From positions 3,162,001 to 3,226,000 of the forward strand of contig JBLDXI010000007.1 of the NCBI GenBank assembly GCA_047495785.1: a stretch of DNA of 64,000 nt, in the 5' to 3' direction. The notes beneath the pieces were generated by a model, which saw only the letters and a list, made by a program, of their open reading frames with translations, had not been told where the DNA came from and searched no databases. Positions 10,980 through 49,750 of the stretch are shown here, piece after piece; within the stretch, counting starts at the first letter, position 1, and every line of letters begins with the position of its first letter. Origin of the DNA: Lepidodermella squamata (lineage: Eukaryota > Animalia > Gastrotricha). A program made the translations under genes and the position numbers.

Positions 10980-12944
10980 ATGAACATGCTAAGATTTATT
11001 TACGGCAATGACGCCGTACCTGGCTCAAATCAACTGAACCAAAAACTCGCATCACTCTCTTCACCCGATGCTCGGCGAAAATTATTCGAAGAAATCGAAA
11101 TTCGATCAATAGGCGGGCAGAAAGAAGCGGATGCCATTAAAACCGAAATCGCTGTCAACCAAGAAGGCGCTGAATTTACCCTGGAATTCGGCGATTATAA
11201 CGAAGCTTTCATGTTCTGCCGGGAATGCGTGTCCCATTTCGACTTTTCGGCTGAATTATTCGAAAAAATGGCTCAAGCCGCTGTTAAAACGAACCAGCCA
11301 GAAGTCGCCATTGCTTGCACCTACCTCCGAAGCCTCGTTAAATCACCACCCTACGACGACGGCGGTAAAATTAGAAAGGAGGCTTATCGCCAACTTGGCT
11401 ACAAAATCACCGGTTCATCACCGCTGTTGGACGATATCGATTTCATTAATTGCATCGAAGGGATCACTGATTTTCCAATCGATTTCGACAGCTGGGACGA
11501 ATTTTCGTTTTTACTCATCCATGCCGCTCCTTACGCTACGAGAGACGTTAAAAACGGCGAGAAAATTTGGCAGGCTCTTCAAGCGAACAGCGGCTTTATG
11601 GCTTTTATCAACAACTTCGATTTCGACGTCGTTTCGCCGTATGAAATTCGATTTTTAGCCACATTTTTCGAGGTGATTAAATCGGAAAATCTCATCAGAG
11701 CGAGATTTAACCTTGAAATTGAATGGTTCGACAATTTTCTCGTCAAATTGCTCAAGTTTCTCGGCACAGAAAATGGCGTGAAAAAAGCAATTTCGATTAA
11801 GGAGGCTTTTTCATTTTTATTTTCAACCTTTGAAAGCCATGTTTACCTGCTGATCGCCAGGCACGACTCTGTTAACGATTTGAATTGGCTGATAAATTTT
11901 TCGGTTCTGTTGATTGTCATCGACAATTTCGGTCGAGCCACGCCTGGGCTGCAAATTTCATTTTTCAAGGCGGCCGAGGGGCAGTTGAAAAACGACGAAT
12001 CCCTCCCGATTTTCATCGAATTTGTGTCATTTATTGTCGCGAGTTTGAAACTGGCAAATGAAGACTGTTTAACCTATTTGATAGCCATTTCGTCGTTAAT
12101 CGAGGATAAGCAAATCTGCGGGATTCTCGCTAAGCAAAGGAGCCTGCCAATTTCTCTGGCTATCAGCATTTCAAACGCAGGCAGAAATCTTCGAAATATC
12201 TGCAGCATTTTAGAAAAATTCGCCGAAAATGATTGGTTCAATTTGGTGAATAACAAAATTTTTGTCGCTAAATTTGTGGAAGGTTGCGAAAAACTTGTGT
12301 CGGCCAGAGGCCATTTAGAAAGCTCAGTTGATTTTATAGAACTGATAATCACGCTGCTTGGAATTGTTCGCAACAAGCCGACAGATTCGCATTTTCGCCG
12401 CCAATTATTCGCCCGGGGGAATTCGCCATTTTCCAAGGCGCTTTTCAACGATCCTGATTGCGAACGAATCGATTCCGAACTGCCGCTAATGTTGGTTATG
12501 TTGAAAATTGCCGACGACGAGACGAAACGCCGGTGGAAAAATTTGTTTGAGAAAAATTCTTTCCCGAAAATTGCGATGGCTATGAAAAATTGTTTAATCG
12601 AGAAAAAATCTAATCAGGAAAATAATTTTTCTCGTCATGTCACGCTTTTGATTTGCCTCCGTAAAATTTTCGAAATTTCCCCGCGGGTCATTTCAGCTTG
12701 TGATTTCGGCGTCTCTGCCCTGGTGTCGCTGGCTGATAATTTGCGTAAAAGTTCGGAATTTCCGGATATTATTGTTGAACTGGCCTTCGGGAAGCTGGTA
12801 GCGTGTATTGCCGAGGGCGATGCAAAGATTCGAGGCGATTTGAAGCGGCATGGAAAAATTTTGAATCAAGTCATCCAGCGTACCCGCCATGCTATGCAGA
12901 TGGGCGTGGCAGAGTTCGGTGATAGAAAAATACAGCCTTTTTAA
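10980..12944 (+). CDS. Uncharacterised 654-aa helical-repeat protein (TPR-like N-terminus, ARM/HEAT-like remainder), single exon
   Basis: Long uninterrupted ORF, AATAAA just after stop, clear N- and C-terminal similarity to the gene at 15405-21709. Fold call is from amphipathic-helix pattern only. Confidence 0.8.
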   Translation: MNMLRFIYGNDAVPGSNQLNQKLASLSSPDARRKLFEEIEIRSIGGQKEADAIKTEIAVNQEGAEFTLEFGDYNEAFMFCRECVSHFDFSAELFEKMAQAAVKTNQPEVAIACTYLRSLVKSPPYDDGGKIRKEAYRQLGYKITGSSPLLDDIDFINCIEGITDFPIDFDSWDEFSFLLIHAAPYATRDVKNGEKIWQALQANSGFMAFINNFDFDVVSPYEIRFLATFFEVIKSENLIRARFNLEIEWFDNFLVKLLKFLGTENGVKKAISIKEAFSFLFSTFESHVYLLIARHDSVNDLNWLINFSVLLIVIDNFGRATPGLQISFFKAAEGQLKNDESLPIFIEFVSFIVASLKLANEDCLTYLIAISSLIEDKQICGILAKQRSLPISLAISISNAGRNLRNICSILEKFAENDWFNLVNNKIFVAKFVEGCEKLVSARGHLESSVDFIELIITLLGIVRNKPTDSHFRRQLFARGNSPFSKALFNDPDCERIDSELPLMLVMLKIADDETKRRWKNLFEKNSFPKIAMAMKNCLIEKKSNQENNFSRHVTLLICLRKIFEISPRVISACDFGVSALVSLADNLRKSSEFPDIIVELAFGKLVACIAEGDAKIRGDLKRHGKILNQVIQRTRHAMQMGVAEFGDRKIQPF

Positions 12945-13398: not shown

Positions 13399-15404
13399 GA
13401 TAGATAGGAAGCCGCTCTCAAAGAAAAAGTTCATCAGCGTGATGAGATCTATCTAGAAATGCATTCAGTTAGGTCATAGGTGATACTTCGTGCAAAATCG
13501 ATTTTGATGACACTTTAGTGCAGTTTGGTGACAGTCCCAACAGTCCCAAGCCTTACGAGACACCGGTCATTTATCCGTTTTCCTCGAATTTATACGATTT
13601 CCCAGCGCGGAGATATGCCTTTAAGACACCCTGGGGTTGTAGTCACCCTGCATGATTTTTTAAATATAGGGTGGCAGGATAAGATGCCGTTGGGCTCTAA
13701 TGGGTTAAGTTCGCGGTGTTTCGAGTTGCTAATCAACTGAAAAATATTTGGAATAATCGGGGGTAATTTATCATCCTGATTAACTAAGATAAAAATGAAT
13801 TTTAAAGGCTTCACAATAATGAATAGGAAATTTGCCTCGTAGATTTTATTACGTGCAAGCTGGTATATTTTTCGGCTCGAATTCAAATTTCATTTATTGG
13901 TAAATGAGAGAGCTTTAATTTTAAATTCAAAACTAAATAGAAGGCTAGGTACTTGATACCTCATAGGAAACGTCGGTTATGGTTATCATTTGAACAGCGC
14001 AATTTTTGACGGTGCAGTTGCAGTATTGCAACTCGAAGCTGCAATTCATTTCTACTGACAAGATACTGATTAGCACCGAGAATATTATTAGAATTTTCCA
14101 ATCGATTTTCTATATCGATACGCAGCGTAAATTTCGTGGCACCAGTTGAGCCAATTATCGAACTTGGCAAATAATTGTGAAGCGCAATCACTTCGTCGTT
14201 TTTTAATCAGTTTCTCGTAATCAAGGCTGAGTGGTTTTTATCTTGGCAAACATTGCTCTTCCCAGCTTTCGGCTAATTCGATAGTTCTGTAAAGAAATTC
14301 CTCGCCCTATTTTTTGAAGTCGTTAACATTTTATAGACGTTTCAATAAGTTTTCACTTCACTTTCTAAAGTAAATTATTTATTTTTGATAAATACCCGAG
14401 AACAGCACATCCTATAAGGCGGCAGAGCAAAAGTTAAGTATAACGGACCCAAATAAAAAAATCATATTTTCAAATAATTTCAGTTATCATGATCGTGTCG
14501 CTTTCTGGCAGTGAAGACCAGGTTTTAGACAGAAAATCACAGAGAATTTCACTTAATTTATTTGGACTTTTTAAATTACCGTATTTGTTCCTATAGCGTG
14601 TCTCATAAGTAACGCAAGCAAAGAAAATATACACGGAAAAGGGTTCAGAAACTCTAAAATGAGAGACTTTAAATTTTTTTGAAAAATTGAAAAATACTAG
14701 AATAGTAATCAGGTATGACACTTGCTAAAGTCCGAAGAAATTTGGCCCAGCCGGGTAAAATACCGAAAATTACCGAACTAGTTACCATCGGGGTTTTTCG
14801 GGTTCTCTTCAGTAAATTTTGCATTTCTTCGGTGAAATCGCGGATAATATTCTGTCGGTAGGTGTAATCTAATAAAATTAGTTGAATTTCTTACAAAAAG
14901 TTGCCGAAATAAAAAACGGTCGCGCAACTTCTGGGCCACTCTCTTTATAATAACCCGGGCTACTAAAATTTCAACTTCGAAATTTTGAAAAATTTGAAAA
15001 TCAATTTTAGTTGAATCGTTCATTTTTTATGCCTTCGAACCGGCTTGACCTGTCAAACCTGGTCTACTATTAGTGATGGGCGATATTAGCAATGGATCAA
15101 ATACGGTAAAATCTTAATTTACAGAAAATCAAAAAAGGTCAGTTTTAGGTGGATTAATTATTTGAAATTTGTTTCCGACAATTTTATCCGTAAGAGACAA
15201 TTTTGGTTCCGCCAAAAATAGGTTTTCGGAATAAAAAGGTATATTTCAAATGATTTAAAAAAAATTAAAAACTTCTGTTTTGATCACATCCCCCTTGTCT
15301 TGGAATTAGTTTTTGCTCGTTCTTTGCTCCGAGATTTTTTGAAACTTGGTTATATTTTTCGTATAAAAAATTTCAAAATTTCAAATTTTAGAGAAATTAT
15401 TATC

Positions 15405-18400
15405 ATGGCGTTCGAATTTATTTTCGGCGAAAATGCGAAACCATGCTCAGCCGAGGTTTACAACAAACTGCTCACCCTGAAATCGCCGCAAGACATCGAC
15501 AACTTCTGCGAAGAAGTTCGCACGCGGGCAGCCGGCGGTTTCAAAGCCGTCGAAGACCGGCGAAAGGCCGCAAAAGCCCTCGAAGAAAAAGCCCACAACT
15601 ACCTGCACCTCGGCTTCACAAAAATCGGCTACGAAACCCTCGTCGCAAAACTCGATTTAATCGGCCAAGATTACCGACTACTCCACATCCTATCCAGAGC
15701 CGCCACCTCGATCGAACGATACGAAGAGGCGATTTTATTCGCTAGAATGGCTGCTCAGCACTACGAGGCGCCGGGCAATACGGCTGAAATCGTTGAAGAA
15801 CTATGCGGCATACCCTACATGGCGCTTGGCTATAGCGAGGTCGTCAAATATTTCGGTATAAAACCGAAAAAATCGGAAATTCCGGAAGATTGCAAACCAG
15901 CAATTCCATTCGACGATGCCGATTATCGGAATGCGTTTGAAAATATCGGAAAAATCGAATTCTCAAATTGGAGTCTGGACTCGTTCGAAAAACGCGCCTT
16001 CTACCTGTGCCACCTATCGCTGCATGGCAAATACCGAAATTCGCCGCAATTACCGTTTTTGACGATTCGAAATTTTCAAATTTTGCTGGATTTGTTGGCG
16101 AAAAATCAGTCGTTTCAGTCGTTTTTGCTTGAGCTCGATATCGCAAAATTGAACGGCGGCGAGTTGCGACTTTTCGCATTTTTCTTACTGCTCATCGGTC
16201 AATATGTTGAGAATTCGAAAATCAGCGCTATGCTAGCCGATCAGCCGTGGTTTCATTTGATGATGAATCGAGTTGCTACAACGAGTTTCAGCCGCGAGGG
16301 CTTGGCGAATCTCGCGAAATTCGACCCTGGTTCATGTTGCGATATTTTGATGAGTTATCAAACTCTGAAATCAATTCGGTCGAGTCTTTTCGAATTTGAA
16401 TTTTTGTGTAAAATCGCGACTTTTCCGGCGTTTTGTGGGCTCAAATATTTGACGACGCCAAGTGCGGTTGGTGCGCCGAATTGTTTTTCGATCTGTTTCA
16501 TGACTTTGCCGTTTCTGCTGCCGAATGCGATGGGTCTACCTGGTGTTCGGGCGCAGTTTGATTCGTATTCAAGGGACAAGTTGGTCAAAGATTTGGATGA
16601 ATTTCTGGTCTTGATGTTTATGAATTTTACGGAATGGAAGGCTGAATTTTTGGCGGACTCCAATTTTCCAGGTAATTTTTTAAATAATTTTCTAATTTTG
16701 AGTGAATTGTTTCGAACTTGTTTTTGGTTTGATATAATGAATATTCATGAATATTTATCGGTTTTTCGATCGAGAGTTACGTGAAAAATGTTATTATGAG
16801 GGGTGAAATTAGATAAATTGTTTGCCCTTTTGATATTCGAGCTAAACAATGATATATATATGATTTTTGCCGTTTTTCGGAAATTTATTATTTAATATTA
16901 ACGATTCGAAAATGTGACTGAAAATGTAACGAATTTCGCGATAAAATACAGCAGCATTCAAAATAATTTCGTGGATAAATAATATAGCCAGTAAGTAAGG
17001 GAAATTTATGTTCAAGTTTTTAACATTTCAATATGGGTGAAAATTAGAAGAGCAGCCCCTTCGAAATTTGTAACTCCTTCCTGAGTTTTCCTATAGTTGA
17101 ATTTATCATAAATAAGCTGAAAGTGGCATTCAACGTCATTCTTAATTATTTACACATTTTCTAAAGCTTTTCTTGATCATAGGTATTAGGAATTATTAAG
17201 TACATTATAGCCAGAAAATTCAGCCATAAATCGGCAGTTTTTCTGAGAAAGTCAGATCGGTTTGAAATCGATGTTCGAGTGGAAGTTGATTTGAGAAGTT
17301 GGAAGATTTAAGCGTGAAGGGTTGATTAGAGATTGATTGATTGATTTTCTGAATCGTCCTTTCAAATTGGTCATGCCAGATCTGTCGAAGGTTCAAATTC
17401 TCTCATCAGTAAAGCGAAATGCGGGTCGATTGAAATCAAGGTTCGAGTCATTATCAATTTAGTATCCCCTTCACATTTGATATATGCTGAAATAGTATGT
17501 TTTTAAGGACCTGAAATTGAATAAAACACACGTATGACATCAATCTTTTATTATTTGAATGAACGTGAACAGAAAATTTTCAAAAAATTCAAGGCAAATT
17601 GACAGAAAAATTGAAATATAATTTTACAAGCAGCCACAGAAAATTTCAAAAAAATCGAGAAGAATTCACAGAATATTTGAAAAAATTGAGGTCATCGGCG
17701 AATTTGTGTTGCACAGCGACAAGGTACTGGTCGATTGTCAACTGACCGTTTTCCAACCTTACCCTTAGCCTCTGGAGTCGGGCGTTGATTCGAACATACT
17801 TCGGTCGTTGCCGGTGTCCTAAATATGAAAAATTGAAATATATGAAGAGAGGAAAGGCATTCGAGTACCTGGAGCTCCGGCTGCGACAGGTAACCGCATC
17901 AGACGGTGATGGCGCTCATCGTCAACCAGTTTTTCCAGTAGCTTCCAAGCACCAGGGTGTCGAACAGCAACTTGCCGATTCAGGCGGTGATGGTAACCTT
18001 CAAAAAATAATAGATTATTGAAAGGGATTAATTATCGTAAGCAAGCCTTCAACGGCATTGTTGGTACGCGTGTCCCTGCCATACGCATTCCAGTGCGCAT
18101 GAGTTTTGACATTGTTCATATGCCATCGCGGCACGAAGTAGGCCTAGAAGTTTTCTTTGTCGGGAGTGTTTCCTTCGTCAATGACACGAGCCATGTATTC
18201 CTCGACCATATGGAGAGGCAGCAAGGCGTGTTTCGATTTAGGGCCTTATGTCGGCCTCGGCATCGATGTCGCCATTCAACATCGCCACGAACTCGGCTGC
18301 TGTAGCAGGATCTCTGTAGCAGGAGCCATTGAAGCTTTCAGCGCCCGATATTCCGGCAGTAACGATGCGCCCGCTTCTCCATGCTCATGAAGCAGCTGTG

Positions 18401-24145: not shown

Positions 24146-24853
24146 CAGTGTTAAATTTGGAAATAAAGTGTTCGTCTTAACGTGTTACGTTCTCGTGCTT
24201 CGCACTTCTTGATTTGTGCTGCATCCATAATATAATCAATAATGATAAATAATAAAATGCGTTGCGCACTTATTGCGCTACACACACACACACTCATTCT
24301 GAGCTGCAGATTTAAAATGTGGGCTTCAATTAGGTTTCAATTAGGCGTGCAGAAATACTGTACTTCTACTGTATTTTCTATCCGAGATTCGAAAGAAAAT
24401 ACAAAAAAACAGCACTATTTAGCCTAAATCTGTAATAAAGCGAGTTCGCGATCAGTTTCGTATTCGTAGTAGGACGAAATTCAAAACGCATTCATCTTTA
24501 TTTCCAAACTACAATTTACGAGCACTAAAGGTAGAGCGTATAAGCCACTGATAATTAGATCCGATTATTTTTATATCATCTTCATTGAGAATAAGACTCA
24601 GACTCAATTTGAGGAAGTTCGAAGTTCTAATTTATGGGCAATTAATTGTTTGAACTAAACTGGATTAAGTATAAAATATGGCACACATTAACTTTCAGAG
24701 TTACAGTCACGATAAAATAAAAAGCAACAAGATTAGACATTCACTCAAACGCTATGACTTTACATTTTCAGCCTCATTTTCAGCTCCGCACTAATATTTG
24801 GTCATACGCCTTTGGATCCGGCATTCCGAGACTGCCAAGTTCGACGTTGGCAT

Positions 24854-25918
24854 TCAGAAAACAACAATGATCGCATATAGATTGATTGACAAGAAGCTGA
24901 CAACGCTAATTAAGAACGTGGCCATGTCAATCGCCCGTGCGCAGGTAACAGACGCCGAACGGACAGATATCACCCACCTCGTGTCATTCAAACGCGGATG
25001 GCGGCTGATCGCCGCAAACATAGCAGCCTCATACAGAACCAAGGCTGCTGTAAGACCGCAGAGGAACAAGATATACTCGGCCATGAGAACAGACTCAGAG
25101 GTTTCAGGTATCTGATCTAAAACACCAGATTGTGCGACAATTAAACTGAGAAGAATGGTCGCGGTGAAAACTGGTCTATCCGAACCATCTGGCTGGAATA
25201 AAAGGGAACCGAACACTAGAACCATCAAAATGAAACACGGAACTAAATTATTGACGATGTAAGGGTGCGGTCGTCGGGAAAAAGAGACTGTGAAGATTGA
25301 GAATCCTGACGTTGAATCGCGCCTTAGATCAGATGAGGTTATACCGTAGGTCGAAGAGGCTTTGTCCAATATCCACATCTCATTCTCGAAAGAGTCGCCA
25401 AATTCAAGGCGAGATCCCCCGAAACTCACAAATTTATCAGCTTCGTCTAGCTCGAACGTGAAATCGCATGTCTGCGAGTCGAACGGGAATTTTCGCAATT
25501 TCAACGAGCATTGCGATGTGATGACTCCGAATCGCATCCAGTGGAAAAACAGCGTTCGATTTGGAACTGTTGGATAGTAGGCAATGTGAATTCGTTCTCT
25601 CCACTTCAAAGCGTTCTCGAGATAGAGATCTGTAGTTGTGTTCGCGAATCTGAGACTTGGAAGCCATACTTGAGATCGTTCAGCTACGTAAACCCGATCG
25701 GCTTCGTTAACATTTGGAGCTGTGATTTCTTGTGGGCAGCTGTCAACCACCCACTGAACATTGATCAAAGTTCCAGCCGAAATCTCACGAGCCTTGGCGT
25801 TGATGTCGAATAATTTCTTGAATCGGAGGGTCATGAAGATCTTCGTTCCAACTGATGGAGCCCTTTGAAAAAATACTCCTATTAGTAGTTGTCCGACTTG
25901 GAGTGTCATTTGTAAACC
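24854..25918 (-). CDS. Cys-loop (pentameric) ligand-gated ion channel exon, copy 1
   Basis: WLPSL loop A, Cys-loop CSLKLRKFPFDSQTC (13-residue spacing), 'FSRRPHPYIVNNLVPC' pre-M1, four TM helices, short M3-M4 loop, no introns, no convincing signal peptide. Confidence 0.93.
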   Translation of the reverse strand, partial: GLQMTLQVGQLLIGVFFQRAPSVGTKIFMTLRFKKLFDINAKAREISAGTLINVQWVVDSCPQEITAPNVNEADRVYVAERSQVWLPSLRFANTTTDLYLENALKWRERIHIAYYPTVPNRTLFFHWMRFGVITSQCSLKLRKFPFDSQTCDFTFELDEADKFVSFGGSRLEFGDSFENEMWILDKASSTYGITSSDLRRDSTSGFSIFTVSFSRRPHPYIVNNLVPCFILMVLVFGSLLFQPDGSDRPVFTATILLSLIVAQSGVLDQIPETSESVLMAEYILFLCGLTAALVLYEAAMFAAISRHPRLNDTRWVISVRSASVTCARAIDMATFLISVVSFLSINLYAIIVVF

Positions 25919-25922
25919 CTAA

Positions 25923-25977
25923 ACCCTCATTAGAAACGGGCGCTCAATCTCAATCGGCGCCCATTTCTAACCGGGGT
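25923..25977. mobile_element. 55-bp palindromic Harbinger-like MITE (also 45876-45930)
   Basis: ACCC..TTAGAAACGGGCGC / GCGCCCATTTCTAA..GGGT flanked by TAA/TAA. Confidence 0.6.
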
Positions 25978-26139
25978 TAACAAATGTTCACTCCAAATAA
26001 GCAGTTTGAGACGATATAAAATGGATTTTAAGATGCAAAGTTTCAGTGGATAGCACCCAAGGAAATAGGCATTTATAATGAGGTGATCGTGGGATTTCAG
26101 TTATTAGAATTTTATCGATTTGTGGGTACTGAGTATTAC

Positions 26140-28661
26140 TCATGTCACCTCTCTACTTATGGTTGAAAACTCGCCATATTCATACTTATTCATTGTAGCT
26201 AGGTATTTGCAAGAATTGAGGTCTTGGATGTCAACAAGAGGGATAATGTTCCCGTCGATCAAATTTGGTATGTTGAATTCGGATGCATTCATCTTGAAGT
26301 CGTAAATCCGCATTGCCTGCGTAGTTGGCCGCCGCGTAGTTGAAGATGATGGCTGCAAGGACCACACATGCATATTCTTCACCGCAGCATCGGCGTTCAC
26401 ACCATCAACTCCATATATTTGGATCGTTGCGTTACCGCCGGATAATTGATCGGCACTCAACCCACTGATATTCACGTTGGAAAAGAGAACTTCAGCACTT
26501 GTGGCTACTCCGTCTGCTAATAGGGCTGTCGAAACCTGTTTAATGAGACATTTAGCCAATAAACACTGCGTAATCCGGACTTATCATACAGAAGCTGAAT
26601 CTCCAACGCTCTGGATGATAAGCCTGAAATCGGCGATTCCAGAACTGGTGTTTGAAGATTGCCTTTCCGCTCGATACACGAAGGTATCAACCATTGGACT
26701 GGATTCATATCGATAAGACAAAGGCACGGCTTGACTGTAAGGGTTGACCTTTGACTCATAGGAAAGGAAGGCTTTACCACCAGGTCCCATTTGCAGTGAC
26801 AGATGAAGACCATCATAATTAGTGAACGTTTGTTTCTTCCCAATCGAGTCGTATCCTTTTCCGAGTTAAAAATGAGAGCTATTATTTGTGAATACAAATT
26901 GATAACCTACCGACTACAGGTGGGGATTTTGCGATTCCAAAAACCAGGTATCCATATGAAGATGAGTTGTACCTTGATGTGATATCAATTTCGATGCGGA
27001 AACCCGTTGCCGCTATATTTCGATTCAGCGGTGTTTTGACGTCCACGTAGCCAAAGTCAATTGTTTGATAGCTGTTGAGTTGAACTCCAGCCGGTGTAAG
27101 GGCTGCTCCGGGTTGCAAGGCGAATGCAGCGGTAGCGTTTAGCGAAGCATTGATCACGTTAAATGAGTTCTGGCTGAGAAACATTGGATTACTTGTTGCC
27201 AAGTAAGGCAAACTCATCGACGCAACATCAGGATCAGGCACTAAGGATCCAGTGACTATTCTTGTGGTAGAAGATGTTCTCGTGGTAGACGATGTTGGCG
27301 GGCTAGTAGTTGATGTCGAGGTTTCAATCTTCGATGTTGTTGATGGTGTACTTGGGGTTGAAGCCGTTGTGGAGGTTGTACTAGGAGAACGAGTAGTAGT
27401 GGTCGTAGTCGCTGTTGAGGTTGAAGCCGTAGTCGTAATTGCTGACGTTGTGGCGGGAATGGTAGTTAGGGCTGTTGAAGCCGTTGCTGGGCTTGTATTC
27501 AATTTCCAAAATTTGAACGCTTTCACTGTGTAGTAGCCTAACAAGTTGAGAGGATAAAAATCGTTACAGTCAAGCAGCGTAGACAAATTATTACGAGGCT
27601 GGACTCTCAAGCCATTTCAATACTGCCGAAACGAATACAGTTTTAATTTAAAATTTCTCAAAACATCACGGCTTTTTAAACTTTAGAGCCTGCATCGCAA
27701 TTTGCGTCAGCTGAGAATCCAGAATGTTCACTGTAGGATTGATGTAGATTTTTATTGGTAGATTGGAGGTTTTTTAGGTTTTATTTGCTCGTTTTTTATT
27801 GGAAGCTAGAACATAGTGAAAACGCACCGGAATTACCGCACCAAGCTTGCCATCTAATCGCCCCGCTGCCACCACCGACATTTGATCCAGCACCTGTCAC
27901 TACTACATCACTAAAGCAGACTGAGGTTTCTTTCGTCCCGTTCGCCGGCAGCTCAGCAATGGCAACAGTTACTTTATCGCCGTAGACCTGAATGAACATT
28001 CGGTAACTGTGCGATCCGCTCGCCGAATTAAACAAGGTTGAGCTTCCGCAAGCGGATTGAGAGATCTGGTTCGGCGAAAATGGAATCGTTCCAACTCCAG
28101 CGTTAGTAACAGACACGGAAACCCGGCCGTTACTACCAAGTTCTTGCCAAACAGATAGCCCCGTTAAACCGGTACCGGTCATACTTGAATCGCAATTAAC
28201 TGATTCGAATTTCTATCATTAAAACTAGCTCACAATGGAAACTATGACCTACTAGTAGTTTGGCCGTAACTTGTCGAAGAAAACGTGATTCCGTAGTAAC
28301 CGAGACCTGTATAAACAGCATCGATGTCGATCTCTGCTCGGAAATCGTTGTCACCAGTTGGAAAGTAGGCATTTGAATACAGGCGCCCTATTTTAGTCGA
28401 ACCACCATTCATCTGGATTCCTGCTGAAGTTTGGCCAACAGCCGTAAATTGGCTGAAAAAGCTTGGTGATACAGTGGCCCCGTTGAAAGACACCGATGCC
28501 CGATATGTTGGCGTTCCGCCGTATAAATACGGCAGTGGTAGCGAAGCAGTGTCGGGATCTTGCGCCAAAGCTTCAAAAAAACCACACAATGCCTTGGCCT
28601 AACATGCAGCTCACGCATTACCTTGAACAATCAGGAACAAAATGACCTTCATAGCCTCCAT
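26140..28661 (-). CDS. Six exons: signal peptide, beta-rich repeat 1, Thr/Ser mucin stalk, beta-rich repeat 2; probable N-terminal extension of the channel, copy 1
   Basis: MEAMKVILFLIVQ|ALA-QDPD signal peptide; repeats DPDTASLPLPYL..FRAEIDI..YRMFIQVYGD and DPDVASMSLPYL..FRIEIDI..FRLIIQSVGD; all introns phase-compatible GT-AG. Confidence 0.82.
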
Positions 28662-29249
28662 TTTGTCCATGCGAATCGTGCGAGCAAACTCCCCAAATGA
28701 AAACCTCTCACAATTGTGGGCGAGCCCTGAAGCCATCCTCATGAATTATGCACTTGCCTGCAAACATTGAGAGCGTTACTCGGCGAGTAACCACTTAGCA
28801 TTCATTAAGCGTTGAAAGAATAAAAACCGAACATGCAATAGTCGGGTGGAATGCTTCTGTAAAATGCCGCTCGTTCTCTGTTAGGCGCTATCCTGGCGAA
28901 CACGCCATCGATGTTTTTGAACTAAAATGCGCAGAACCTGACGCGCCGTGGGGGTGTTTTCCATTGACATCCTCTGTAAGAGCTAATCCTCTGTCCTGAA
29001 AAAATGGACCTCCTAATGGGTGTATTCTTTTATTCCCCACCTCGCCCGAGGTCGCCCGCCGGATTTCACGGGAAAACAATAAACAAACCGGGCTGGGCGG
29101 GCAATGAACACATTTTTTTATTCGCCCGTCTTTTTGTGGCGCTGTAGTGCATTCAGCAATACACGAGCATCTTATGCTGTAAATTTCATTGATATCAAGT
29201 ATGCTTTTTTATCGAACAGTCCTTCGTCTGATAGCAACCCAGTCGAATA

Positions 29250-30004
29250 CCGTATTTCTCGAAAATTTACCGCGGGCTATATTTATGAACAAATGATTTT
29301 TGATTCGGGTTGTATTAGGGAGTGGGGATATATACGGGTGTGCTGTTTAATTGCGAATCATCACAAAAAGCCGCGAGCAATTCGTATTAAGACGACGTTT
29401 TTAGATTGTTTTATTTGTCGATTCAGTGAAAAGGAGACGATGACGCTTTTCCATGCCAGCGAACTGTAGAATCAGCAGCTGTTGGTGATGTTGTAGCCAT
29501 TCCTTGACGCATCGACGATCGACCTTGAAGACTCTCGAGGCATCGTTTGCTGAGATTGCTTTTGCATGATCAGCCACGCGAATTTTGTATGCGAGGGAAT
29601 ACTTGCGGTGCCGCTTTCGCTTGTCTTCTTCGGACACCTGGACGGAATCTTGAAGACGATCAGGAGAGCCAGCCATCATCGATTCCAGAAGGTTAAAACG
29701 ATTAAGAAGGATATGAAAATGTTAAAATAAAACTCTGTGTCTCAGCTAGTGAATTTTCTGCTGGCTTATGAATGGTGCCAAGATCAGACGTTGCGAAGCT
29801 GCTTACGCGATAGCTAATCACTGATTACGATAATGCGTCATTAATAAGGCTTTTCTTTTGTTCCAACGCATGCTTCGCCCAAATTAAAATAGCTGTGGTA
29901 CAATTTCGAGGCCTGGGTTAAATATGAACAAACGATTTTTTCGTCGGGTTGTATTAGGGAGCGGGGATATATACAGGTGTGTCGTATATTTTCGAGAAAT
30001 ACGG
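29250..30004 (-). mobile_element. pogo-family deletion derivative retaining Brinker-type DNA-binding domain
   Basis: TIR CCGTATTTCTCGAAAAT / ATTTTCGAGAAATACGG, TA flanks; ORF 29401-29679 'RKYSLAYKIRVADHA..ASRVFKVDRRCVKEW'; no DDD domain. Confidence 0.88.
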
Positions 30005-37199: not shown

Positions 37200-38260
37200 C
37201 AAAATAAAACCAACAACAAACAGACACGACAAATAAGGCGCCGGCACAACGGGGACACGCGCTTGTCTTAGACAGTGCACGGACTACACTATTGGGGAGG
37301 CATATGAGCGAAATTATCGGCTGCGTAAGGTTTAACGGTCAGGGAGAAGGTGAAGGATAAGAGGAATGCTAGTGGCAGATGAGGTGAGAAGACAGAAAGA
37401 AACTTGAAGCACGGCGGAACAGGAGACCGCAGACAGGAATTATAAGCGGATATAACATAAACAGATAGAAAAAAAACGGAAAGAAAAGATGGTAACATAA
37501 GGACTGTAGCGGAGAGAAGGAGGAGAGGGAGATTAAGTCACGAAGACAGGGAGCGGGCTCGACGACAGGCGGTCATGGAGGACAACGACTGGCGACTTCA
37601 TCGTCGTCGGCGGACGTAAGCGGACGCTTTCGATTTGCTCGCGAAGTGGCAGGACATATCTGCAAGCATTCTCTGCGTAGCGGGCTTGAACCTGGCAGAA
37701 AAACTCTGAAAGGCTAGGCAGGCGACACCGCCGCTCGAGTTCGGTGATACGAACACGGTCAGCGAGGCGTACGTTAAGCATGGCGCACAGGCACTTATTC
37801 TGGAGGACGTCGAGGCGGCGCAACTGATGCTTGGCAGCGGACGAAAAGGCGACGCAGCCGAAGGAAGCGTTGTGTGGTACCAAGAAAGATTTTGCCCGCA
37901 GCGGCTCAGAGTACGGTCCATGTGGGGCTTCCACGAGAGCTTGGCGTCAAAGTGAATGCCTAAGACGCGCAACAATTCGACCTGAGGGATAGCAGAGCCA
38001 TTGAGCGACAAATGCAAGACTGGTGGCTGGCGCCCGAAAGCGAGCGCTTCACTTTTAGAGGCGTTGAACTGTTGGCGCCAAAGCCGGGCCCACGAAGACA
38101 CTCGGTCGACTTCCGCCTGTACCCGGGACTCAGCCTCCAGAAACGACACACCGGTACCGAGGACGGTCAAATCGTCAGCGTAGGCGTCAAGGACGCTACC
38201 ACGAGCGCTAGAGGCACCTAGGAGATCCGCGGTGAATAAGATGTAGAGCAGAGGCGACAT
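37200..38260 (-). mobile_element. 5'-truncated LINE (Jockey/I-like) RT fragment with 3' UTR
   Basis: 'SPLLYILFTADL..AYADD..FNASKS..LGIHFDAKLSWKPH', 'LDVLQNKCLCAML'. Confidence 0.88.
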
Positions 38261-44805: not shown

Positions 44806-45871
44806 TCAGAAAACAACAATGATCGCATATAGATTGATAGACAAGAAGCTGGCCACGCTAATTAAGAACGTGGCCGTGTCAACCGCCCGTGCGTAGGTAA
44901 AAGATGCCGAACGGACAGATATCAACCACTTCGTGTCGCTCAAATGTGGATGGCGATTGGTCGCCGCAAACATAGCAGCCTCATACAGAACCAAGGCTGC
45001 TGTAAGACCGCAGAGGAACAAGATATACTCGGCCATGAGAACAGACTCCGAGGTTTCAGGTATCTGATCTAAAACATCAGATTGTGTGACAATTAAACTG
45101 AGAAGAATGGTCGCGGTGAAAGCTGGTCTATCCGCAACATCTGGCTGGAATAAAAGGGAACCGAACACTAGAACCATCAAAATGAAACACGGAGCTAAAT
45201 TATTGATGATGTAAGGGTGCGGTCGTCGGGAAAAAGAGACTGTGAAGATTGAGAATCCTGACGTTGAATTGTGCCTTAGATCAGATGAGGTTATACCGTA
45301 GGCTGAAGAGGCTTTGTCCAATATCCACATCTCATTCTCGAAAGAGTCGCCGAATTCAAGGCGAGATCCCCCGAAACTCACAAATTTATCAGCTTCGTCT
45401 AGCTCGAACGTGAAATCGCATGTCTGCGAGTCGAACGGGAATTTTCGCAATTTCAACGAGCATTGCGATGTGATGACTCCGAATCGCATCCAGTGGAAAA
45501 ACAGCGTTCGATTTGGAACTGTTGGATAGTAAGCTATGTGAATTCGTTCTTTCCATGTCAAATCATTCTCGAGATAGAGATCCGTAGTTGTGTTTGCGAA
45601 TCTGAGACTTGGAAGCCATACTTCAGATCGTTCAGCTACGTAAACCCGATCGGCTTCATTAACATTTGGAGCTGTTATTTCTTGTGGGCAGCAGTCAACC
45701 ACCCACTGAACATTGATTAAAGTTCCAGCCGAAATCTCACGAGCCTTAGCGTTGATGTCGAATAATTTCTTGAATTGAAGGGTCATGAAGATCTTCGTTC
45801 CAACTGATGGAGCCCTTTGAAAAAATACTCCTATTAGTAGTTCTCCGACTTGGAATGCACATTTGTAAACC
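44806..45871 (-). CDS. Cys-loop ligand-gated ion channel exon, copy 2
   Basis: Same motifs as copy 1; frame open upstream of ATG 45786 as VYKCAFQVGELLIGVFFQRAP to acceptor at 45872/45871. Confidence 0.93.
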
Positions 45872-46105
45872 CTAAACCCTCATAAGAAACGGGCGCACAA
45901 GCTCAATCGGCGCCCATTTCTAACCGGGGTTAACAAATGTTCACTCCAAATAAGCAGTTTGAGACCATATAAAATGGATTTTAAAATGCAGAGTTTCAGT
46001 GGATAGCACCCAAGGAAATAGGCAAATAGGCATTTATAATGAGGTGATCGTGGGATTGAGGATGTCAGTTTGCATTTTATCGATTTGTGGGTACTGAGTA
46101 CACAC

Positions 46106-49100
46106 TCATATCACCTCTCTACTTATGGTTGAAAGCTCGCCATATTCATACTTATTCATTGTAGCTAGGTATTTGCAAGAATTGAGGTCTTGGATGTCAA
46201 CAAGAGGGATCATGTTCCCGTCGATCAAATTTGGTATGTTGAATTCGGATGCATTCATCTTGAAGTCGTAAATCCGCATTGCCTGCGTAGTTGGCCGCAG
46301 CGTAGTTGAAGGTGATGGCTGCAAGGACCACACATGCATATTCTTCACCGCAGCATCGGCGTTCATACCATCTACTCCATATATTTGGATCGTTGCGTTA
46401 CCGCCGGATATTTGATCGGCACTCAACCCACTGATATTCACGTTGGAAAAGAGAACTTCAGCACTTGTGGCTACTCCGTCTGCTAATAGGGCTGTCGAAA
46501 CCTGTTTAATAAGACATTTAGCCAATAAACACTGCTTAATCCGGACGTATCATACCGAAGCTGAATCTCCAACGCTCTGGAAGATAAGCCTGAAATCGGC
46601 GATTCCAGAACTGGTGTTTGAAGATTGCCTTTTCGCTCGATACACGAAGGTATCAACCATTGGACTGGATTCATATCGATAAGACAAAGGCACGGCTTGA
46701 CTGTAAGGGTTGACCTTTGACTCATAGGAAAGGAAGGCTTTACCACCAGGTCCCATTTGCAATGACAGATGAAGACCATCATAATTAGTGAACGTTTGTT
46801 TCTTCCCAATCGAGTCGTATCCTTTTCCGAGTTAAAAATGAGAGCTATTATTTGTGAATACACATAACCTACCGACTACAGCTGGTGATTTTGCGATTCC
46901 AAAAACCAGGTATCCATATGAAGATGAGTTGTACCTTGATGTGATATCAATTTCGATGCGGAAACCCGTTGCCGCAATATTTCGATTCAGCGGTGTTTTG
47001 ACGTCCATGTAGCCAAAGCCAATTGTTTGATAGCTGTTTAGTTGAACTCCAGCCGGTGTAAGGGCTGCTCCGGGTTGCAAGGCGAATGCAGCGGTAGCGT
47101 TTAGCGAAGCATTGATCACGTTAAATGAGTTCTCACCGAGAAACATTGGATTACCTGCCGCCAAGTAAGGCAAACTCATCGACGCAACATCAGGATCAGG
47201 CACTAAGGATCCAGTGACTGTTCTTGTAATAGAAGATGTTCTCGTGGTCGACGATGTTGGCGGGCTAGTCGTTGATGTCGAGGTTTCAATCTTCGATGTT
47301 GTTGATGGTGTACTTGGGGTTGAAGCCGTTGTGGAGGTTGTACTTGGAGAACGAGTAGTAGTGGTCGTAGTCATTGTTGAGGTTGAGGCCGTAGTTGTAA
47401 TTGTTGACGTTGATGGCGTGCTTGTGGTGGTGCTACTTGTTGTTGACGATGTGGCGGGAGTTGTGGTTATGGCTGTTGCATCCGTTGCTGGGCTTGTATT
47501 CAATTTCCAAAATTTGAACGCTTTCAATGTGTAGTAGCCTAACAGGTTGAGAGGATAAAAATGGTTACTGTTAAGCATAGACAAATCATTAAGAGCAGAG
47601 CTGTGTCAAAGGAAAAAGGCCAATACCGAGACCAATACAAATACAAGATCAAGGACAGTGGCTCCTGTTTTGAGACTTGTATTGGTCTTGGCCTTTATGT
47701 TTGGGTGGTCTTGCCATAGCCTTGAAAACCTGAGTGACAGTTTCAGACGCAAGTTTACAATTTTAGACGCTGGCATTCAGATTTGTGCAAACAATAGCAC
47801 CAGGACGGATAAACATAAGCTTTCCGCCAAATTATTTATTTTATTTTAGTAGCGATTACAGCATATGGTAATATTTTGGATAATATTAAAATATATCAAC
47901 GGCGCCTCACTGACGAGGTAAGAAATTTACTATAGTCAGACGACAAAATGGCAATCTTAAATTTGTTAAATCTACAATTAATAGTTTCAAGCTTCAAAAA
48001 ATTCCAAAAGTTGATACATCTTCTATGGAACGAAAACTTTTCACAGTCAATACGGCTGTTCAATGGCGTTTCAGACTTTATTAAGACTTTAATCATTTGA
48101 TTATTAGCCAATGTTCACAGCTACAATTATAAAGAAGAATTGTTCAGATGTTCTGAACTAGCAGCTAAAATGAACATACATTTTTGTTGCCATTCTGAAT
48201 GCATATGCATATGCAAATGATTCGAGTGGTTTAGATCAACCTCACTTTTCGGGGTGGTTTTTTGTTTTTTTTTCCATCCAAACAGCATTTGCAAGCCCAA
48301 CTTGTTTTCTCAACTAACATATCCGCGTATTCAAAGTATTGTGTGTAAAGTATTGTTCACCTAACTTGGAGGTCTGGTATTTGATATAGGCCTTGGTCTT
48401 TCAAAATTTGGTATGCCTTGACGAAGCCTTGGTATTCATCAAAATAATTGTCCTGTCCTTGGTATTTGTCTTTCACAAAAATAAATTGAAGGACACACCT
48501 CTGATTAAGAGGCTGGACTCTCGCGCTGTTTCAATACTGCCGAAATCATTAACATTTTTATTTAAAATTATTCCTCATGTAAATTGTCAAGCAATTTTTC
48601 GAATTTTTCGAATTTGAGGCCTCACTTTGTACTGCCGTTGCAACGACATTTTCATCGGTATTTGAGGAGCCGTAATCATGAAGGGCAGAAGCTCACGCTC
48701 AATCCGAACATCTAAATCTCAAACTTTGAAGCCAGGTCATTCAAATTTCCCAAAAAATCTTTTTTAAACTTGCATCGCAATTTGCGTCAGCTGAGAATCC
48801 AGAATGTTCACTGTAGGATTGATGTAGATTTTTATTGGTAGATTGGAGGTTTTTTAGGTTTTTATTTGCTCGTTTTTTATTTGAAGCTAGATCATAGTGA
48901 AAACGCACCGGAATTACCGCACCAAGCTTGCCATCTAATCACCCCGCTGCCACCACCGACATTTGATCCAGCACCTGTCACTACTACATCACTAAAGCAG
49001 ATTGAGGTTACTTTCGTCCCGTTCGCCGGCAGCTCAGCAATGGCAACAGTTACTTTATCGCCGTAGACCTGAATGAACATTCGGTAACTGTGCGATCCGC

Positions 49101-49750
49101 TCGCCGAATTGAACAAGGTTGAGCTTCCGCAAGCGGATTGAGAGATCTGGTTCGGCGAAAATGGAATCGTTCCAACTCCAGCGTTAGTAACAGACGCGGA
49201 AACCCGGCCGTTACTACCAAGTTCTTGCCAAACAGATAGCCCCGTTAAACCGGTACCGGTAATACTTGAATCGCAATTAACTGATTCGAATTTCTATTAT
49301 TAAAACTAGCTCACAATGGAAACTATGACCTACTAGTAGTTTGGCCGTAACTTGTCGAAGAAAACGTGATTCCGTAGTAACCGAGACCTGTATAAACAGC
49401 ATCGATGTCGATCTCTGCTCTGAAATCGTTGTCACCAGTTGGAAAGTAGGCATTTGAATACAGGCGCCCTATTTTAGACGAACCACCATTCATCTGTATT
49501 CCTGCTGAAGTTTGGCCAATAGCCGTAAATTGGCTGAAAAAGCTTGGTGATACAGTGGCTCCGTTGAAAGACACTGATGCCCGATATGTTGGCGTTCCGC
49601 CGTATAAATACGGCAGTGGTAGCGAAGCAGTGTCGGGATCTTGCGCCAAAGCTTCAAAAATAAACAGTAAATCATACAATGCCTTGAGCTAGCATGCAGC
49701 TTAAGCATACCTTGAACAATCAGGAAAAAAATGGCTTTCATAGCCTCCAT
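46106..49750 (-). CDS. Signal peptide, beta-rich repeats and mucin stalk exons, copy 2
   Basis: MEAMKAIFFLIVQ|ALAQDPD; same exon phases as copy 1; longer mucin tract; intron 3 expanded by insertions. Confidence 0.82.
47596..48503. mobile_element. hAT non-autonomous element containing a CR1-like LINE 3' fragment (47896-48111, minus)
   Basis: TIR CAGAGCTGTGTC / GACACACCTCTG; 8-bp TSD ATTAAGAG; empty site in copy 1 near 27590; 'FSFHRRCINFWNFL..FK..DYSKFL'. Confidence 0.9.

What the first reader, a model, noticed from the sequence alone, without database searches (positions are those of the whole stretch)
24854..28661. Putative pentameric ligand-gated channel fused to two lectin-like domains and a mucin stalk
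Seen: six phase-compatible exons encode a signal peptide (MKVILFLIVQALA), a ~240-aa beta-rich repeat, a ~70-aa Thr/Ser tract and a second repeat. They end ~230-270 nt upstream of an intronless Cys-loop channel exon that has its own acceptor (TTTAG|G, 25919/25918) and no convincing signal peptide. The whole unit was duplicated as one block. Known: animal Cys-loop subunits normally start at the ligand-binding domain; extra N-terminal jelly-roll lobes are known in prokaryotic pLGICs such as DeCLIC. Inference: the repeats (DFRAEIDI, YRMFIQVYGDKVTV, GAIRWQ..YTVKAFKFWKL) resemble ConA-like/DUF1080 beta-sandwiches. This would give a ~1000-aa subunit and a pentamer displaying ten candidate glycan-binding domains, i.e. 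a possible contact/glycan-gated or tethered sensor. The channel lacks loop-C vicinal Cys and loop-B Trp, so ACh is an unlikely ligand.
Basis: partly seen in the sequence, partly recalled or inferred. Interest (0 to 1): 0.92.

Follow-up and report, generated by a model that had tools for sequence, protein, structure and literature searches.

The report
Lectin-headed Cys-loop channel gene, duplicated
Two neighbouring copies of one seven-exon gene in a small, unidentified invertebrate each encode a nicotinic-receptor-type ion channel with two lectin-like domains and a sugar-coated stalk on its outer end, an add-on that the channel literature I could search describes only in bacteria.

Summary

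**The junction.** An RNA-like run has a contig that joins 26186 to 25862 on the minus strand. The intron is GT..AG and 323 nt long. It is in frame with the channel ORF, and the stop at 26140 lies inside it.

**Both copies.** Copy 1 is at 24854-28652 and copy 2 at 44806-49741. Both keep the splice sites and read open through seven exons (987 and 1000 aa, 94% identical). Every indel that is not a multiple of three lies in an intron.

**Uninterrupted relatives.** In 19 environmental relatives inspected, the segment encoded at the end of exon 6 (a helix with a conserved Cys) runs directly into the channel domain.

**The channel.** It is a cationic, nicotinic-type Cys-loop subunit with a very short M3-M4 loop. 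It lacks the loop-B Trp and the loop-C Cys pair.

**The repeats.** They are 26% identical to each other and have no Pfam, PDB or database match. The fold is inferred from a relative. Its repeat gives a weak model whose best matches are all legume-type (L-type) lectins, and its protein-language-model features also point there. Sugar binding is untested.

The scan has flagged the same architecture on other pieces of this genome.

The parts
28622..28652 (-). Copy 1 exon 1: start codon and signal-peptide core (MKVILFLIVQ; ALA|Q cleavage motif is completed in exon 2). Further in-frame ATGs lie just upstream.
   Evidence: donor CAAG|GTAATG; the RNA-like run X1 covers 28536-28672 and not 28673-28800.
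28253..28570 (-). Copy 1 exon 2: first half of lectin-like repeat 1 (the DPDxASLxLPYL and FRAEIDI motifs). Alternative end at 28249.
   Evidence: The preferred donor A|GTAGGT is phase 1, the same hexamer, phase and position as in repeat 2.
27837..28199 (-). Copy 1 exon 3: second half of repeat 1 (TGLSVW, YRMFIQVYGDKVTV and CFSDV motifs; two conserved Cys). Alternative start at 28183.
   Evidence: It aligns collinearly with the N-terminal domains of relatives. X1 depth is 10-12.
26911..27537 (-). Copy 1 exon 4: last strand of repeat 1 (VKAFKFWKL), the 86-aa Thr/Ser/Pro stalk (27242-27499) and the first half of repeat 2. Alternative end at 26918.
   Evidence: The stalk is 74% T+S+P. Copy 2 has a 39-nt in-frame insertion here.
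26590..26855 (-). Copy 1 exon 5: middle of repeat 2. Alternative starts at 26835 or 26771.
   Evidence: There are no RNA contigs here, so the boundaries rest on frame, splice consensus and the repeat 1/repeat 2 analogy.
26186..26535 (-). Copy 1 exon 6: end of repeat 2 (to 26350), a short T-rich linker (26263-26349), then a family-specific helix before strand beta-1 with a conserved Cys (codon 26209-26211).
   Evidence: The donor AATAA|GTATGA is used in an RNA contig. The helix and Cys are conserved and contiguous with the channel domain in 19 relatives.
25863..26185 (-). Copy 1 intron 6 (323 nt, GT..AG).
   Evidence: X1 joint 25861->26185, 'skips 323, CT..AC (cut +1)'; X1 depth is 0 over 25933-26069. 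Copy 2 differs here by several indels that are not multiples of three.
24854..25862 (-). Copy 1 exon 7: channel ECD (25262-25861; Cys-loop 25466-25510), M1 25196-25261, M2 25115-25177, M3 25007-25090, 22-aa M3-M4 loop, M4 24857-24940, stop 24854-24856.
   Evidence: Pfam Neur_chan_LBD 1.4e-8. The nearest PDB chains are nAChR subunits, 8e-16.
44806..49741 (-). Copy 2 of the whole gene: exons 49741-49711, 49651-49334, 49280-48918, 47538-46873, 46821-46556, 46501-46152, 45814-44806 (1000 aa, open). Intron 3 carries an extra ~1.08 kb.
   Evidence: All splice sites are conserved. The protein is 94% identical to copy 1. dN/dS is about 0.45.

Best explanation
What it is (shown): each copy is one seven-exon gene. 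From N to C it encodes:
- a signal peptide;
- beta-rich repeat 1;
- an 86-99-aa Thr/Ser/Pro stalk of the kind that is usually heavily O-glycosylated;
- repeat 2;
- a short T-rich linker;
- a family-specific helix with a conserved Cys;
- a Cys-loop extracellular domain;
- four membrane helices with a very short M3-M4 loop.

The pore-lining M2 has the cation-channel signature: acidic at -1', Leu at 9', acidic at 20'. The gene belongs to a lineage-restricted clade of nicotinic-type channels whose members carry one to three ConA-like heads (L-type-lectin-like or LamG_3-like), usually on Thr-rich stalks.

How it works (inferred): five subunits would form a cation channel crowned by ten beta-sandwich domains. 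Repeat 2 would sit directly on the ligand-binding domain, and repeat 1 would be held out on the stalk. The heads most likely act as an accessory recognition or modulatory module. They would capture or sense a macromolecular ligand or matrix component and bias gating, by analogy with the N-terminal lobes of the bacterial channel DeCLIC.

Odds: architecture about 0.9; the heads being ConA-like/L-type-lectin-like sandwiches about 0.75; the heads modulating gating about 0.45.
For: 1. RNA. Run X1 has exon-limited depth. One contig joins 26186 to 25862 across a GT..AG intron, and by direct reading of the sequence this is in frame with the channel ORF.
2. Conservation between copies. Under the same exon chain both copies are open (974/987 aa or 987/1000 aa, depending on two internal splice choices). 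All twelve splice sites are conserved. All indels that are not multiples of three lie in introns, which are 51/59, 53/53, 299/1379, 55/51, 54/54 and 323/337 nt long in copy 1/copy 2.
3. No conserved separate start. The in-frame ATG at 25909 that could start a stand-alone channel in copy 1 is out of frame in copy 2.
4. Uninterrupted relatives. P0151 (812-aa ORF; 910 aa with its signal-peptide exon) has two repeats, a T-run and the channel in one exon. BLASTP to the model gives 34% identity, E 8e-69, and the alignment runs straight across our splice junction. All 19 relatives inspected carry the helix and Cys before strand beta-1 that the window encodes in exon 6.
5. Channel type. Pfam LBD; nearest solved chains are nAChR subunits at 8e-16, with M2-M3 aligned.
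6. Heads. Repeat 1 against repeat 2 gives E 1e-11. The window repeats align collinearly with the relatives' domains: hhalign pairwise E 5.8e-5, but probability only 38% (alignment).
7. Fold of the relative's repeat. The AF2 model of P0151 repeat 2 has pLDDT 53 overall and 60-84 in the core. Its 50 best PDB matches are all L-type lectins, Z 7.6-8.3. Atlas shape and feature searches also return Lectin_leg-like and Lectin_legB clusters.
8. More distant clade members P0028, P0023 and P0019 carry Pfam Laminin_G_3, with E 6e-16 for P0028.
Against: - Only one RNA contig carries the junction: depth 5.6, with 30 nt on the shorter side.
- The run is only guessed to be RNA and is labelled a different organism from the DNA-like run.
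- No RNA contigs cover exon 5 or the 5' part of exon 6.
- The repeats have no Pfam hit at E<=10, no PDB sequence hit and no database homologues.
- The window's own repeats could not be folded, because a spliced sequence has no reference.
- The proxy model is low-confidence, and its Z scores sit at the level the tool calls 'middling'.
- dN/dS of 0.4-0.5 between the copies shows only mild constraint.
- Nothing here tests ligand binding, assembly or conduction.
Confidence: 0.8

Rival explanations
1. Two separate adjacent genes: a secreted lectin-like mucin protein ending at the stop at 26140, and an intronless stand-alone channel starting at the ATG at 25909.
For: In copy 1 the channel ORF has an in-frame ATG followed by a mildly hydrophobic stretch. 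The upstream frame reaches a stop at 26140 if the donor at 26186 is ignored.
Against: A spliced contig bridges the two parts, and X1 depth in between is zero. In copy 2 the ATG is out of frame. A stand-alone channel would lack the helix and Cys before strand beta-1 that all 19 relatives inspected have directly ahead of the channel domain. Relatives encode both parts in one exon.
Confidence: 0.05
2. The fusion is real, but the heads serve to anchor or localise the channel, for example to matrix, cuticle or mucus, or as a mechanical tether. They would not sense a ligand that modulates gating.
For: The long Thr/Ser/Pro stalk and the variable number and type of heads across the clade resemble adhesion or tethering modules. 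No sugar- or metal-binding residues could be established.
Against: Repeat 2 sits only about 45 residues from the ligand-binding domain, a position comparable to the gating-modulating lobes of DeCLIC (PMC12664993). There is no direct evidence either way.
Confidence: 0.25
3. Alternative isoforms: besides the fused mRNA, retention of intron 6 gives a soluble two-repeat protein ending at the stop at 26140. This does not exclude the main explanation.
For: The retained-intron frame runs 15 codons to a stop, so a secreted form is possible.
Against: X1 depth is 0-0.9 over the intron. There is no canonical AATAAA near 26140 (direct reading).
Confidence: 0.15
4. One or both copies are recently duplicated, decaying genes with no function.
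For: dN/dS is 0.4-0.5, and the copies are young (dS about 0.06).
Against: Both copies keep about 3 kb of open frame across seven exons, with all splice sites. The only coding indel is in frame. RNA-like contigs cover most exons.
Confidence: 0.05

Closest known systems
DeCLIC and other prokaryotic pLGICs with an N-terminal domain (Hu et al. 2020, as cited in PMC12664993; PMC9897478)
   Same: The same polypeptide carries two beta-sandwich lobes N-terminal to the ligand-binding domain. There is essentially no intracellular domain. In DeCLIC the lobes modulate gating.
   Different: DeCLIC is bacterial, has no Cys-loop disulfide, and its lobes are 8-stranded jelly rolls that bind calcium. Here the channel is an animal-type cationic Cys-loop subunit. 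The heads look L-type-lectin-like, one is held on a mucin-like stalk, and the gene has spliceosomal introns. Homology between the two kinds of head was not tested.
Nicotinic acetylcholine receptor subunits (nearest solved: Torpedo beta, 2bg9_B)
   Same: Cys-loop with FPFD, M1-M3 aligned at E 8e-16, and cation-type M2 with 9' Leu.
   Different: There is no loop-B Trp and no loop-C Cys pair. The M3-M4 loop is 22 aa instead of 100 aa or more. An extra ~650-aa N-terminal region is present, and there is a family-specific Cys in the first helix.
L-type lectins (legume lectins, ERGIC-53, VIP36; Pfam Lectin_legB and Lectin_leg-like)
   Same: They are the best and only consistent structural match for the repeat of the nearest uninterrupted relative, and they match its language-model features. 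The size is similar at about 230-260 aa.
   Different: No sequence-level match to any lectin family. Sugar- and metal-binding residues are not identifiable. The fold was not predicted for the window's own repeats.
Plant L-type lectin receptor kinases
   Same: The logic is the same: an extracellular legume-lectin-like head is fused to a membrane signalling module, in large lineage-specific families. One such cluster and one Arabidopsis entry appear among the fold matches.
   Different: The output module there is a kinase, not an ion channel. The lineages are unrelated, so this is an analogy only.

Membership tests
Pentameric ligand-gated (Cys-loop) ion channels | Ligand-binding-domain profile match above the curated cut-off | tested here: met
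   Pfam PF02931, 34.9 bits against a cut-off of 26, E 1.4e-8.
Pentameric ligand-gated (Cys-loop) ion channels | Cys-loop: two Cys 13 residues apart around the invariant Pro | tested here: met
   C-x13-C with FPFD at 25466-25510. C118, C132 and P126 are invariant in alignment A1.
Pentameric ligand-gated (Cys-loop) ion channels | Four transmembrane helices with a pore-lining M2 | tested here: met
   M1-M3 align to Torpedo beta at E 8e-16, and M4 is present. Pfam PF02932 alone is below its cut-off (17.5 against 28.1 bits).
Pentameric ligand-gated (Cys-loop) ion channels | Pentameric assembly and ligand-gated conduction | not testable with these tools
   Needs expression and electrophysiology.
Acetylcholine-gated nicotinic alpha subunits | Loop-C vicinal Cys pair and loop-B Trp | tested here: not met
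   There is no Cys between the Cys-loop and M1. Counted by hand against the Torpedo alpha-1 sequence recalled from memory (the alignment is to the beta chain), the loop-B Trp position falls on Asp.
L-type (legume-like) lectin domain | Sequence profile match (Lectin_legB, Lectin_leg-like, Lectin_L-type_dom) | tested here: not met
   No Pfam hit at E<=10 for any exon of either repeat, nor for the relatives' heads. A profile of the domain finds nothing in PDB sequences.
L-type (legume-like) lectin domain | Two-sheet ConA-like beta-sandwich fold | tested here: inconclusive
   Tested only on the relative P0151, repeat 2. The model has pLDDT 53. Its top 50 PDB matches are all L-type lectins at Z 7.6-8.3, aligning ~150 of ~235 residues. 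Foldseek best E is 0.018. Atlas TM is 0.45-0.50. The window repeats are linked to it by hhalign E 5.8e-5, probability 38%.
L-type (legume-like) lectin domain | Conserved metal- and sugar-binding residues; carbohydrate binding | not tested
   No reliable residue-level alignment to a lectin was obtained. Binding needs a glycan array.
   No hit at E<=10.
pLGICs with an N-terminal accessory domain (DeCLIC type) | Extra folded domains N-terminal to the ligand-binding domain in the same polypeptide | tested here: met
   Spliced junction, frame conserved in both copies, and single-exon relatives.
pLGICs with an N-terminal accessory domain (DeCLIC type) | Homology of the accessory domain to the DeCLIC NTD lobes | not tested
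   No direct comparison was run. The folds reported differ (8-stranded jelly roll against an L-type-lectin-like sandwich).
Mucin-like stalk | Long tract dominated by Thr/Ser/Pro | tested here: met
   86 aa at 74% T+S+P in copy 1; 99 aa at 79% in copy 2. O-glycosylation itself is not testable here.

The most novel reading that the evidence does not exclude
These genes define an animal class of ionotropic receptors in which binding of a glycan or another macromolecule to lectin-like heads, rather than a small transmitter in the classical pocket, opens or tunes a pentameric cation channel. That would be a direct electrical read-out of surface or particle recognition, for example of food, microbes or mates.
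Probability: 0.2. Interest if true: 0.9.

Novelty: new variant of a known kind. Interest (0 to 1): 0.75.

Why it matters
Reviews and structural papers on this channel family treat N-terminal accessory domains as a prokaryotic feature, and the intracellular loop as the eukaryotic add-on (PMC12664993, PMC9897478). Seven full-text searches found no paper that describes a eukaryotic Cys-loop channel with lectin-like heads.

This locus adds transcript-level evidence that such a protein is made in an animal-type genome. Relatives in environmental eukaryotic contigs carry one to three ConA-like heads, so this is a clade and not a one-off.

It gives a testable system for how large extracellular modules couple to pLGIC gating. 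It is also a candidate receptor family for macromolecular cues.

Tried and rejected
**Rejected**
A 1-nt indel between the copies lies inside the proposed exon extension, and the RNA joint uses 25863/25862.

**Led nowhere**
- Pfam at E<=10 on every repeat exon and on the relatives' heads.
- A profile of the domain against PDB sequences.
- Two database searches, one with P0151 residues 1-440 and one with the domain alignment.
- Atlas feature search on exon 3 alone: best score 0.77, uninformative.
- AF2 on P0151 repeat 2 without an alignment: pLDDT 31.
- Rfam on the whole window: no hits.
- The metagenome scan with the channel alignment returned only distant pLGICs at 21-30% identity, and none helped with the heads.

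**Not identified or left undecided**
- Organism. The closest relatives are all unnamed ENA metagenome proteins. The best named hit is a clam protein at 29% identity.
- Fold of the window's own repeats. A spliced sequence has no reference, and I did not paste it.
- Introns 2 and 4. Alternative in-frame splice choices could not be separated. I prefer the pair with GTAGGT donors in phase 1 at equivalent positions in both repeats, which gives 53- and 55-nt introns.
Full report
**1. What is at the coordinates**

The window is eukaryotic, about 41% G+C. The largest ORF in the region, on the minus strand at 24854-25909, matches Pfam Neur_chan_LBD (E 1.4e-8, above the curated cut-off) and, more weakly, Neur_chan_memb.
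- It has a canonical Cys-loop, two Cys 13 residues apart around FPFD.
- It has four hydrophobic segments and only 22 residues between M3 and M4.
- Its nearest solved relatives are nicotinic receptor subunits. Torpedo beta scores 8e-16 and aligns from strand beta-1 through M3. 5-HT3A and GABA-A chains are far weaker, at about 3e-6.
- In that alignment M2 has an acidic residue at -1' (SDR against GEK), Leu at 9' and an acidic residue at 20'. That is the cation-channel pattern.
- There is no Cys between the Cys-loop and M1. By a hand count against the alpha-1 sequence as I recall it, the loop-B Trp position is occupied by Asp.

Upstream on the same strand lie short ORFs that chain through GT-AG introns.

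**2. Duplication**

The block 24544-29047 recurs at 44483-50151 with 91-94% DNA identity. The base-by-base alignment shows that copy 2 has about 1.08 kb extra inside one intron and a 39-nt in-frame insertion in the Thr-rich tract.

**3. The fusion junction**

I laid two public runs on 24700-28800.
- Run X2 has even depth of about 100-470 across the stretch and behaves as DNA.
- Run X1 is flagged 'RNA?'. It has depth only over the predicted exons and the 3' end. Depth is zero over 25933-26069, 27577-27713 and upstream of 28672.
- One X1 contig skips 323 bases between 25861 and 26185, with ends CT..AC (cut +1).

On the minus strand that skip is a GT..AG intron from 26185 to 25863. The donor is AATAA|GTATGA and the acceptor is TTTTTTCAAAG|G. 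Reading the sequence, exon 6 ends after two bases of a codon (AA), and exon 7 supplies a G and then continues in the channel ORF's frame (…MNK|APSVGTK…). The stop at 26140 that closes the upstream ORF is therefore intronic.

**4. Independent support from the second copy**

Mapping the exon chain onto copy 2 gives an open frame with all donors and acceptors conserved.
- With my first choice of internal sites the proteins are 974 and 987 aa.
- With the preferred model they are 987 and 1000 aa, and 94% identical.
- Intron lengths in copy 1/copy 2 are 51/59, 53/53, 299/1379, 55/51, 54/54 and 323/337 nt. Every length change that is not a multiple of three falls in an intron.

With the RNA-backed site they need the same phase. 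The same insertion puts the ATG at 25909, the only candidate start for a stand-alone channel, out of frame in copy 2.

dN/dS between the copies is 0.40-0.53 in every part, at dS of about 0.06. That is mild constraint and not decisive.

**5. Independent support from relatives**

A full HMMER scan with the channel exon found 1849 relatives. The best are only 33-44% identical and all come from unnamed ENA metagenome assemblies. In my local re-scan, 16 of the proteins held by then (14 of the 150 listed plus two cluster members) carry 150-770 extra N-terminal residues.

One cluster member, P0151, is an 812-aa uninterrupted ORF with two repeats, a run of Thr and then the channel.
- BLASTP of my spliced model against it gives 34% identity and E 8e-69.
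- The alignment starts 33 residues before our splice junction and runs straight across it.
- Its contig has an upstream exon with a clear signal peptide, separated by a 63-nt GT-AG intron. It is therefore eukaryotic, and the full protein is 910 aa.

I aligned the 60 residues ahead of the channel domain in 19 relatives. All show a conserved motif (…IP.v…D[LI]l..C[DEK][HFY][FLI]…) followed by the first beta-strand. In the window that motif is encoded at the 3' end of exon 6. The channel exon alone would lack it.

The Cys in this helix (codon 26209-26211) and an invariant Cys in the ECD (C42 of alignment A1, codon 25736-25738) may form a family-specific disulfide. That is an inference.

**6. The N-terminal part**

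The order is:
- signal-peptide-like start;
- repeat 1, about 237 aa;
- a stalk of 86 aa with 74% Thr+Ser+Pro (99 aa and 79% in copy 2);
- repeat 2, about 261 aa;
- a 29-aa T-rich linker.

The two repeats are 26% identical over about 240 residues (E 1e-11). In the preferred model each is split at the equivalent position by a phase-1 intron with the donor GTAGGT, as expected from an internal duplication. Introns 2 and 4 have other in-frame options, and no RNA contig covers them.

**7. Fold of the repeats**

There is nothing at the sequence level.
- No Pfam family at E<=10 for any repeat exon or for the heads of P0151, P0012, P0006, P0018 or P0005.
- No PDB sequence hit with a profile.
- No database homologues.

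The heads of clade members are linked only by a web of weak matches. A MAFFT alignment nevertheless brings the same motifs into register: F[QD]GL[AS].W, a conserved Cys.IQ[YIV]..D..T[IV]A, C[FY]S[ND]V, and F..FKL. Profile-profile comparison of the window's repeats with the others is collinear over 207 columns. The pairwise E is 5.8e-5, but the probability is only 38%.

The window's own repeats are split by introns, so they have no reference and I could not fold them. As a proxy I folded repeat 2 of P0151.
- Alone it failed (pLDDT 31).
- With an 8-row alignment it reached pLDDT 53 and pTM 0.54, with a beta-rich core at 60-84.
- Foldseek against the PDB gave no hit below E 1e-3. The list is dominated by legume lectins, Emp46p, ERGIC-53 and VIP36, with a best hit at E 0.018 and probability 0.99.
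- On re-alignment the top 50 entries are all L-type lectins, Z 7.6-8.3, with about 150 aligned residues spanning nearly the whole lectin chain. The tool warns that Z values under 8 can be background.
- The Atlas shape search again returned Lectin_leg-like, Lectin_legB and other ConA-like clusters at TM 0.45-0.50.
- The language-model feature search on P0151 1-432 returned legume-lectin clusters at 0.88-0.92.
- More distant clade members carry Pfam Laminin_G_3, from the same ConA-like superfamily: P0028 at 6e-16, P0023 and P0019 weakly.

I read this as probable (about 0.75) ConA-like sandwiches, nearest the L-type lectins. Membership of any lectin family is not shown, and carbohydrate binding is untested.

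**8. Literature**

The papers I could search describe N-terminal domains as a feature of some prokaryotic pLGICs. DeCLIC is the only one characterised, and the intracellular domain is treated as the eukaryotic counterpart (PMC12664993, PMC9897478). The broad inventory of the superfamily (PMC4795631) does not contain the terms 'N-terminal', 'additional domain' or 'lectin'. Searches combining the channel with lectin, ConA or LamG terms found nothing relevant. Absence from this library is not proof of absence.

**9. Earlier notes of this scan**

The same architecture has been flagged on several other pieces of this genome, including intron-free genes followed up by other agents. I could not read that DNA. 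What this locus adds is a spliced version with a transcript-level junction.

**10. Mechanism and verdict**

Shown:
- one gene, two copies;
- an animal-type cationic Cys-loop subunit with about 650 extra N-terminal residues, made of two related beta-rich domains and a mucin-like stalk.

Inferred:
- a pentamer with ten heads, repeat 2 seated on the ligand-binding domain and repeat 1 tethered on the stalk;
- the heads act as a recognition or modulatory module, about 0.45;
- pure anchoring, about 0.25.

The fast-evolving, variable heads on a conserved channel, in tandem lineage-specific arrays, fit an environmental or surface-recognition receptor family better than a synaptic one. That is an argument from pattern, not a test.

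Noticed in passing
window 10980-12944 (+) and 15300-16784 (+): Two large ORFs (654 and 494 aa) have no Pfam match. Their N-termini look related to each other (…IYGNDA…KL..L.SP… against …IFGENA…KL..LKSP…). They may be a lineage-specific paralogous pair.
   Followed up: partly
window 47539-48917 (copy 2 intron 3): Copy 2's intron 3 is 1379 nt against 299 nt in copy 1, which is about 1.08 kb of extra sequence of unknown origin.
   Followed up: no
window 26209-26211 and 25736-25738: A Cys in the helix before strand beta-1 (exon 6) and a Cys after the second strand of the ECD (exon 7) are conserved in all relatives inspected. They may form a family-specific disulfide that bridges the two exons' products.
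   Followed up: partly
window 24854-28652 against 44806-49741: Synonymous divergence between the copies is uneven: about 0.03-0.04 in the two repeats, but about 0.09-0.11 in the stalk and channel. This may reflect partial gene conversion.
   Followed up: partly
window 25357 / 26255 (run X2): The DNA-like run has one contig joining 25357 to 26255. It skips 897 nt, has GG..CG ends and only 26 nt on the shorter side. It is probably a paralogue or an assembly-graph artefact.
   Followed up: no
window 37598-38260 (-) and 29401-29679 (-): A reverse-transcriptase fragment (Pfam RVT_1, 2.4e-5) and an ORF that I judged by eye to resemble a pogo/Tigger-type transposase N-terminus lie between the two gene copies.
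   Followed up: partly
proteins P0004, P0017, P0028 (relatives): The heads vary across the clade. P0004 has a small Cys-rich domain plus a Thr stalk, P0017 has an EGF-like module, and P0028 has three LamG_3-like units. The channel seems to accept many kinds of N-terminal module.
   Followed up: partly
L002 280-3075: An environmental eukaryotic contig encodes a 910-aa orthologue-like protein. A signal-peptide exon and a 63-nt intron are followed by a single exon that holds both repeats, the Thr run and the channel.
   Followed up: yes
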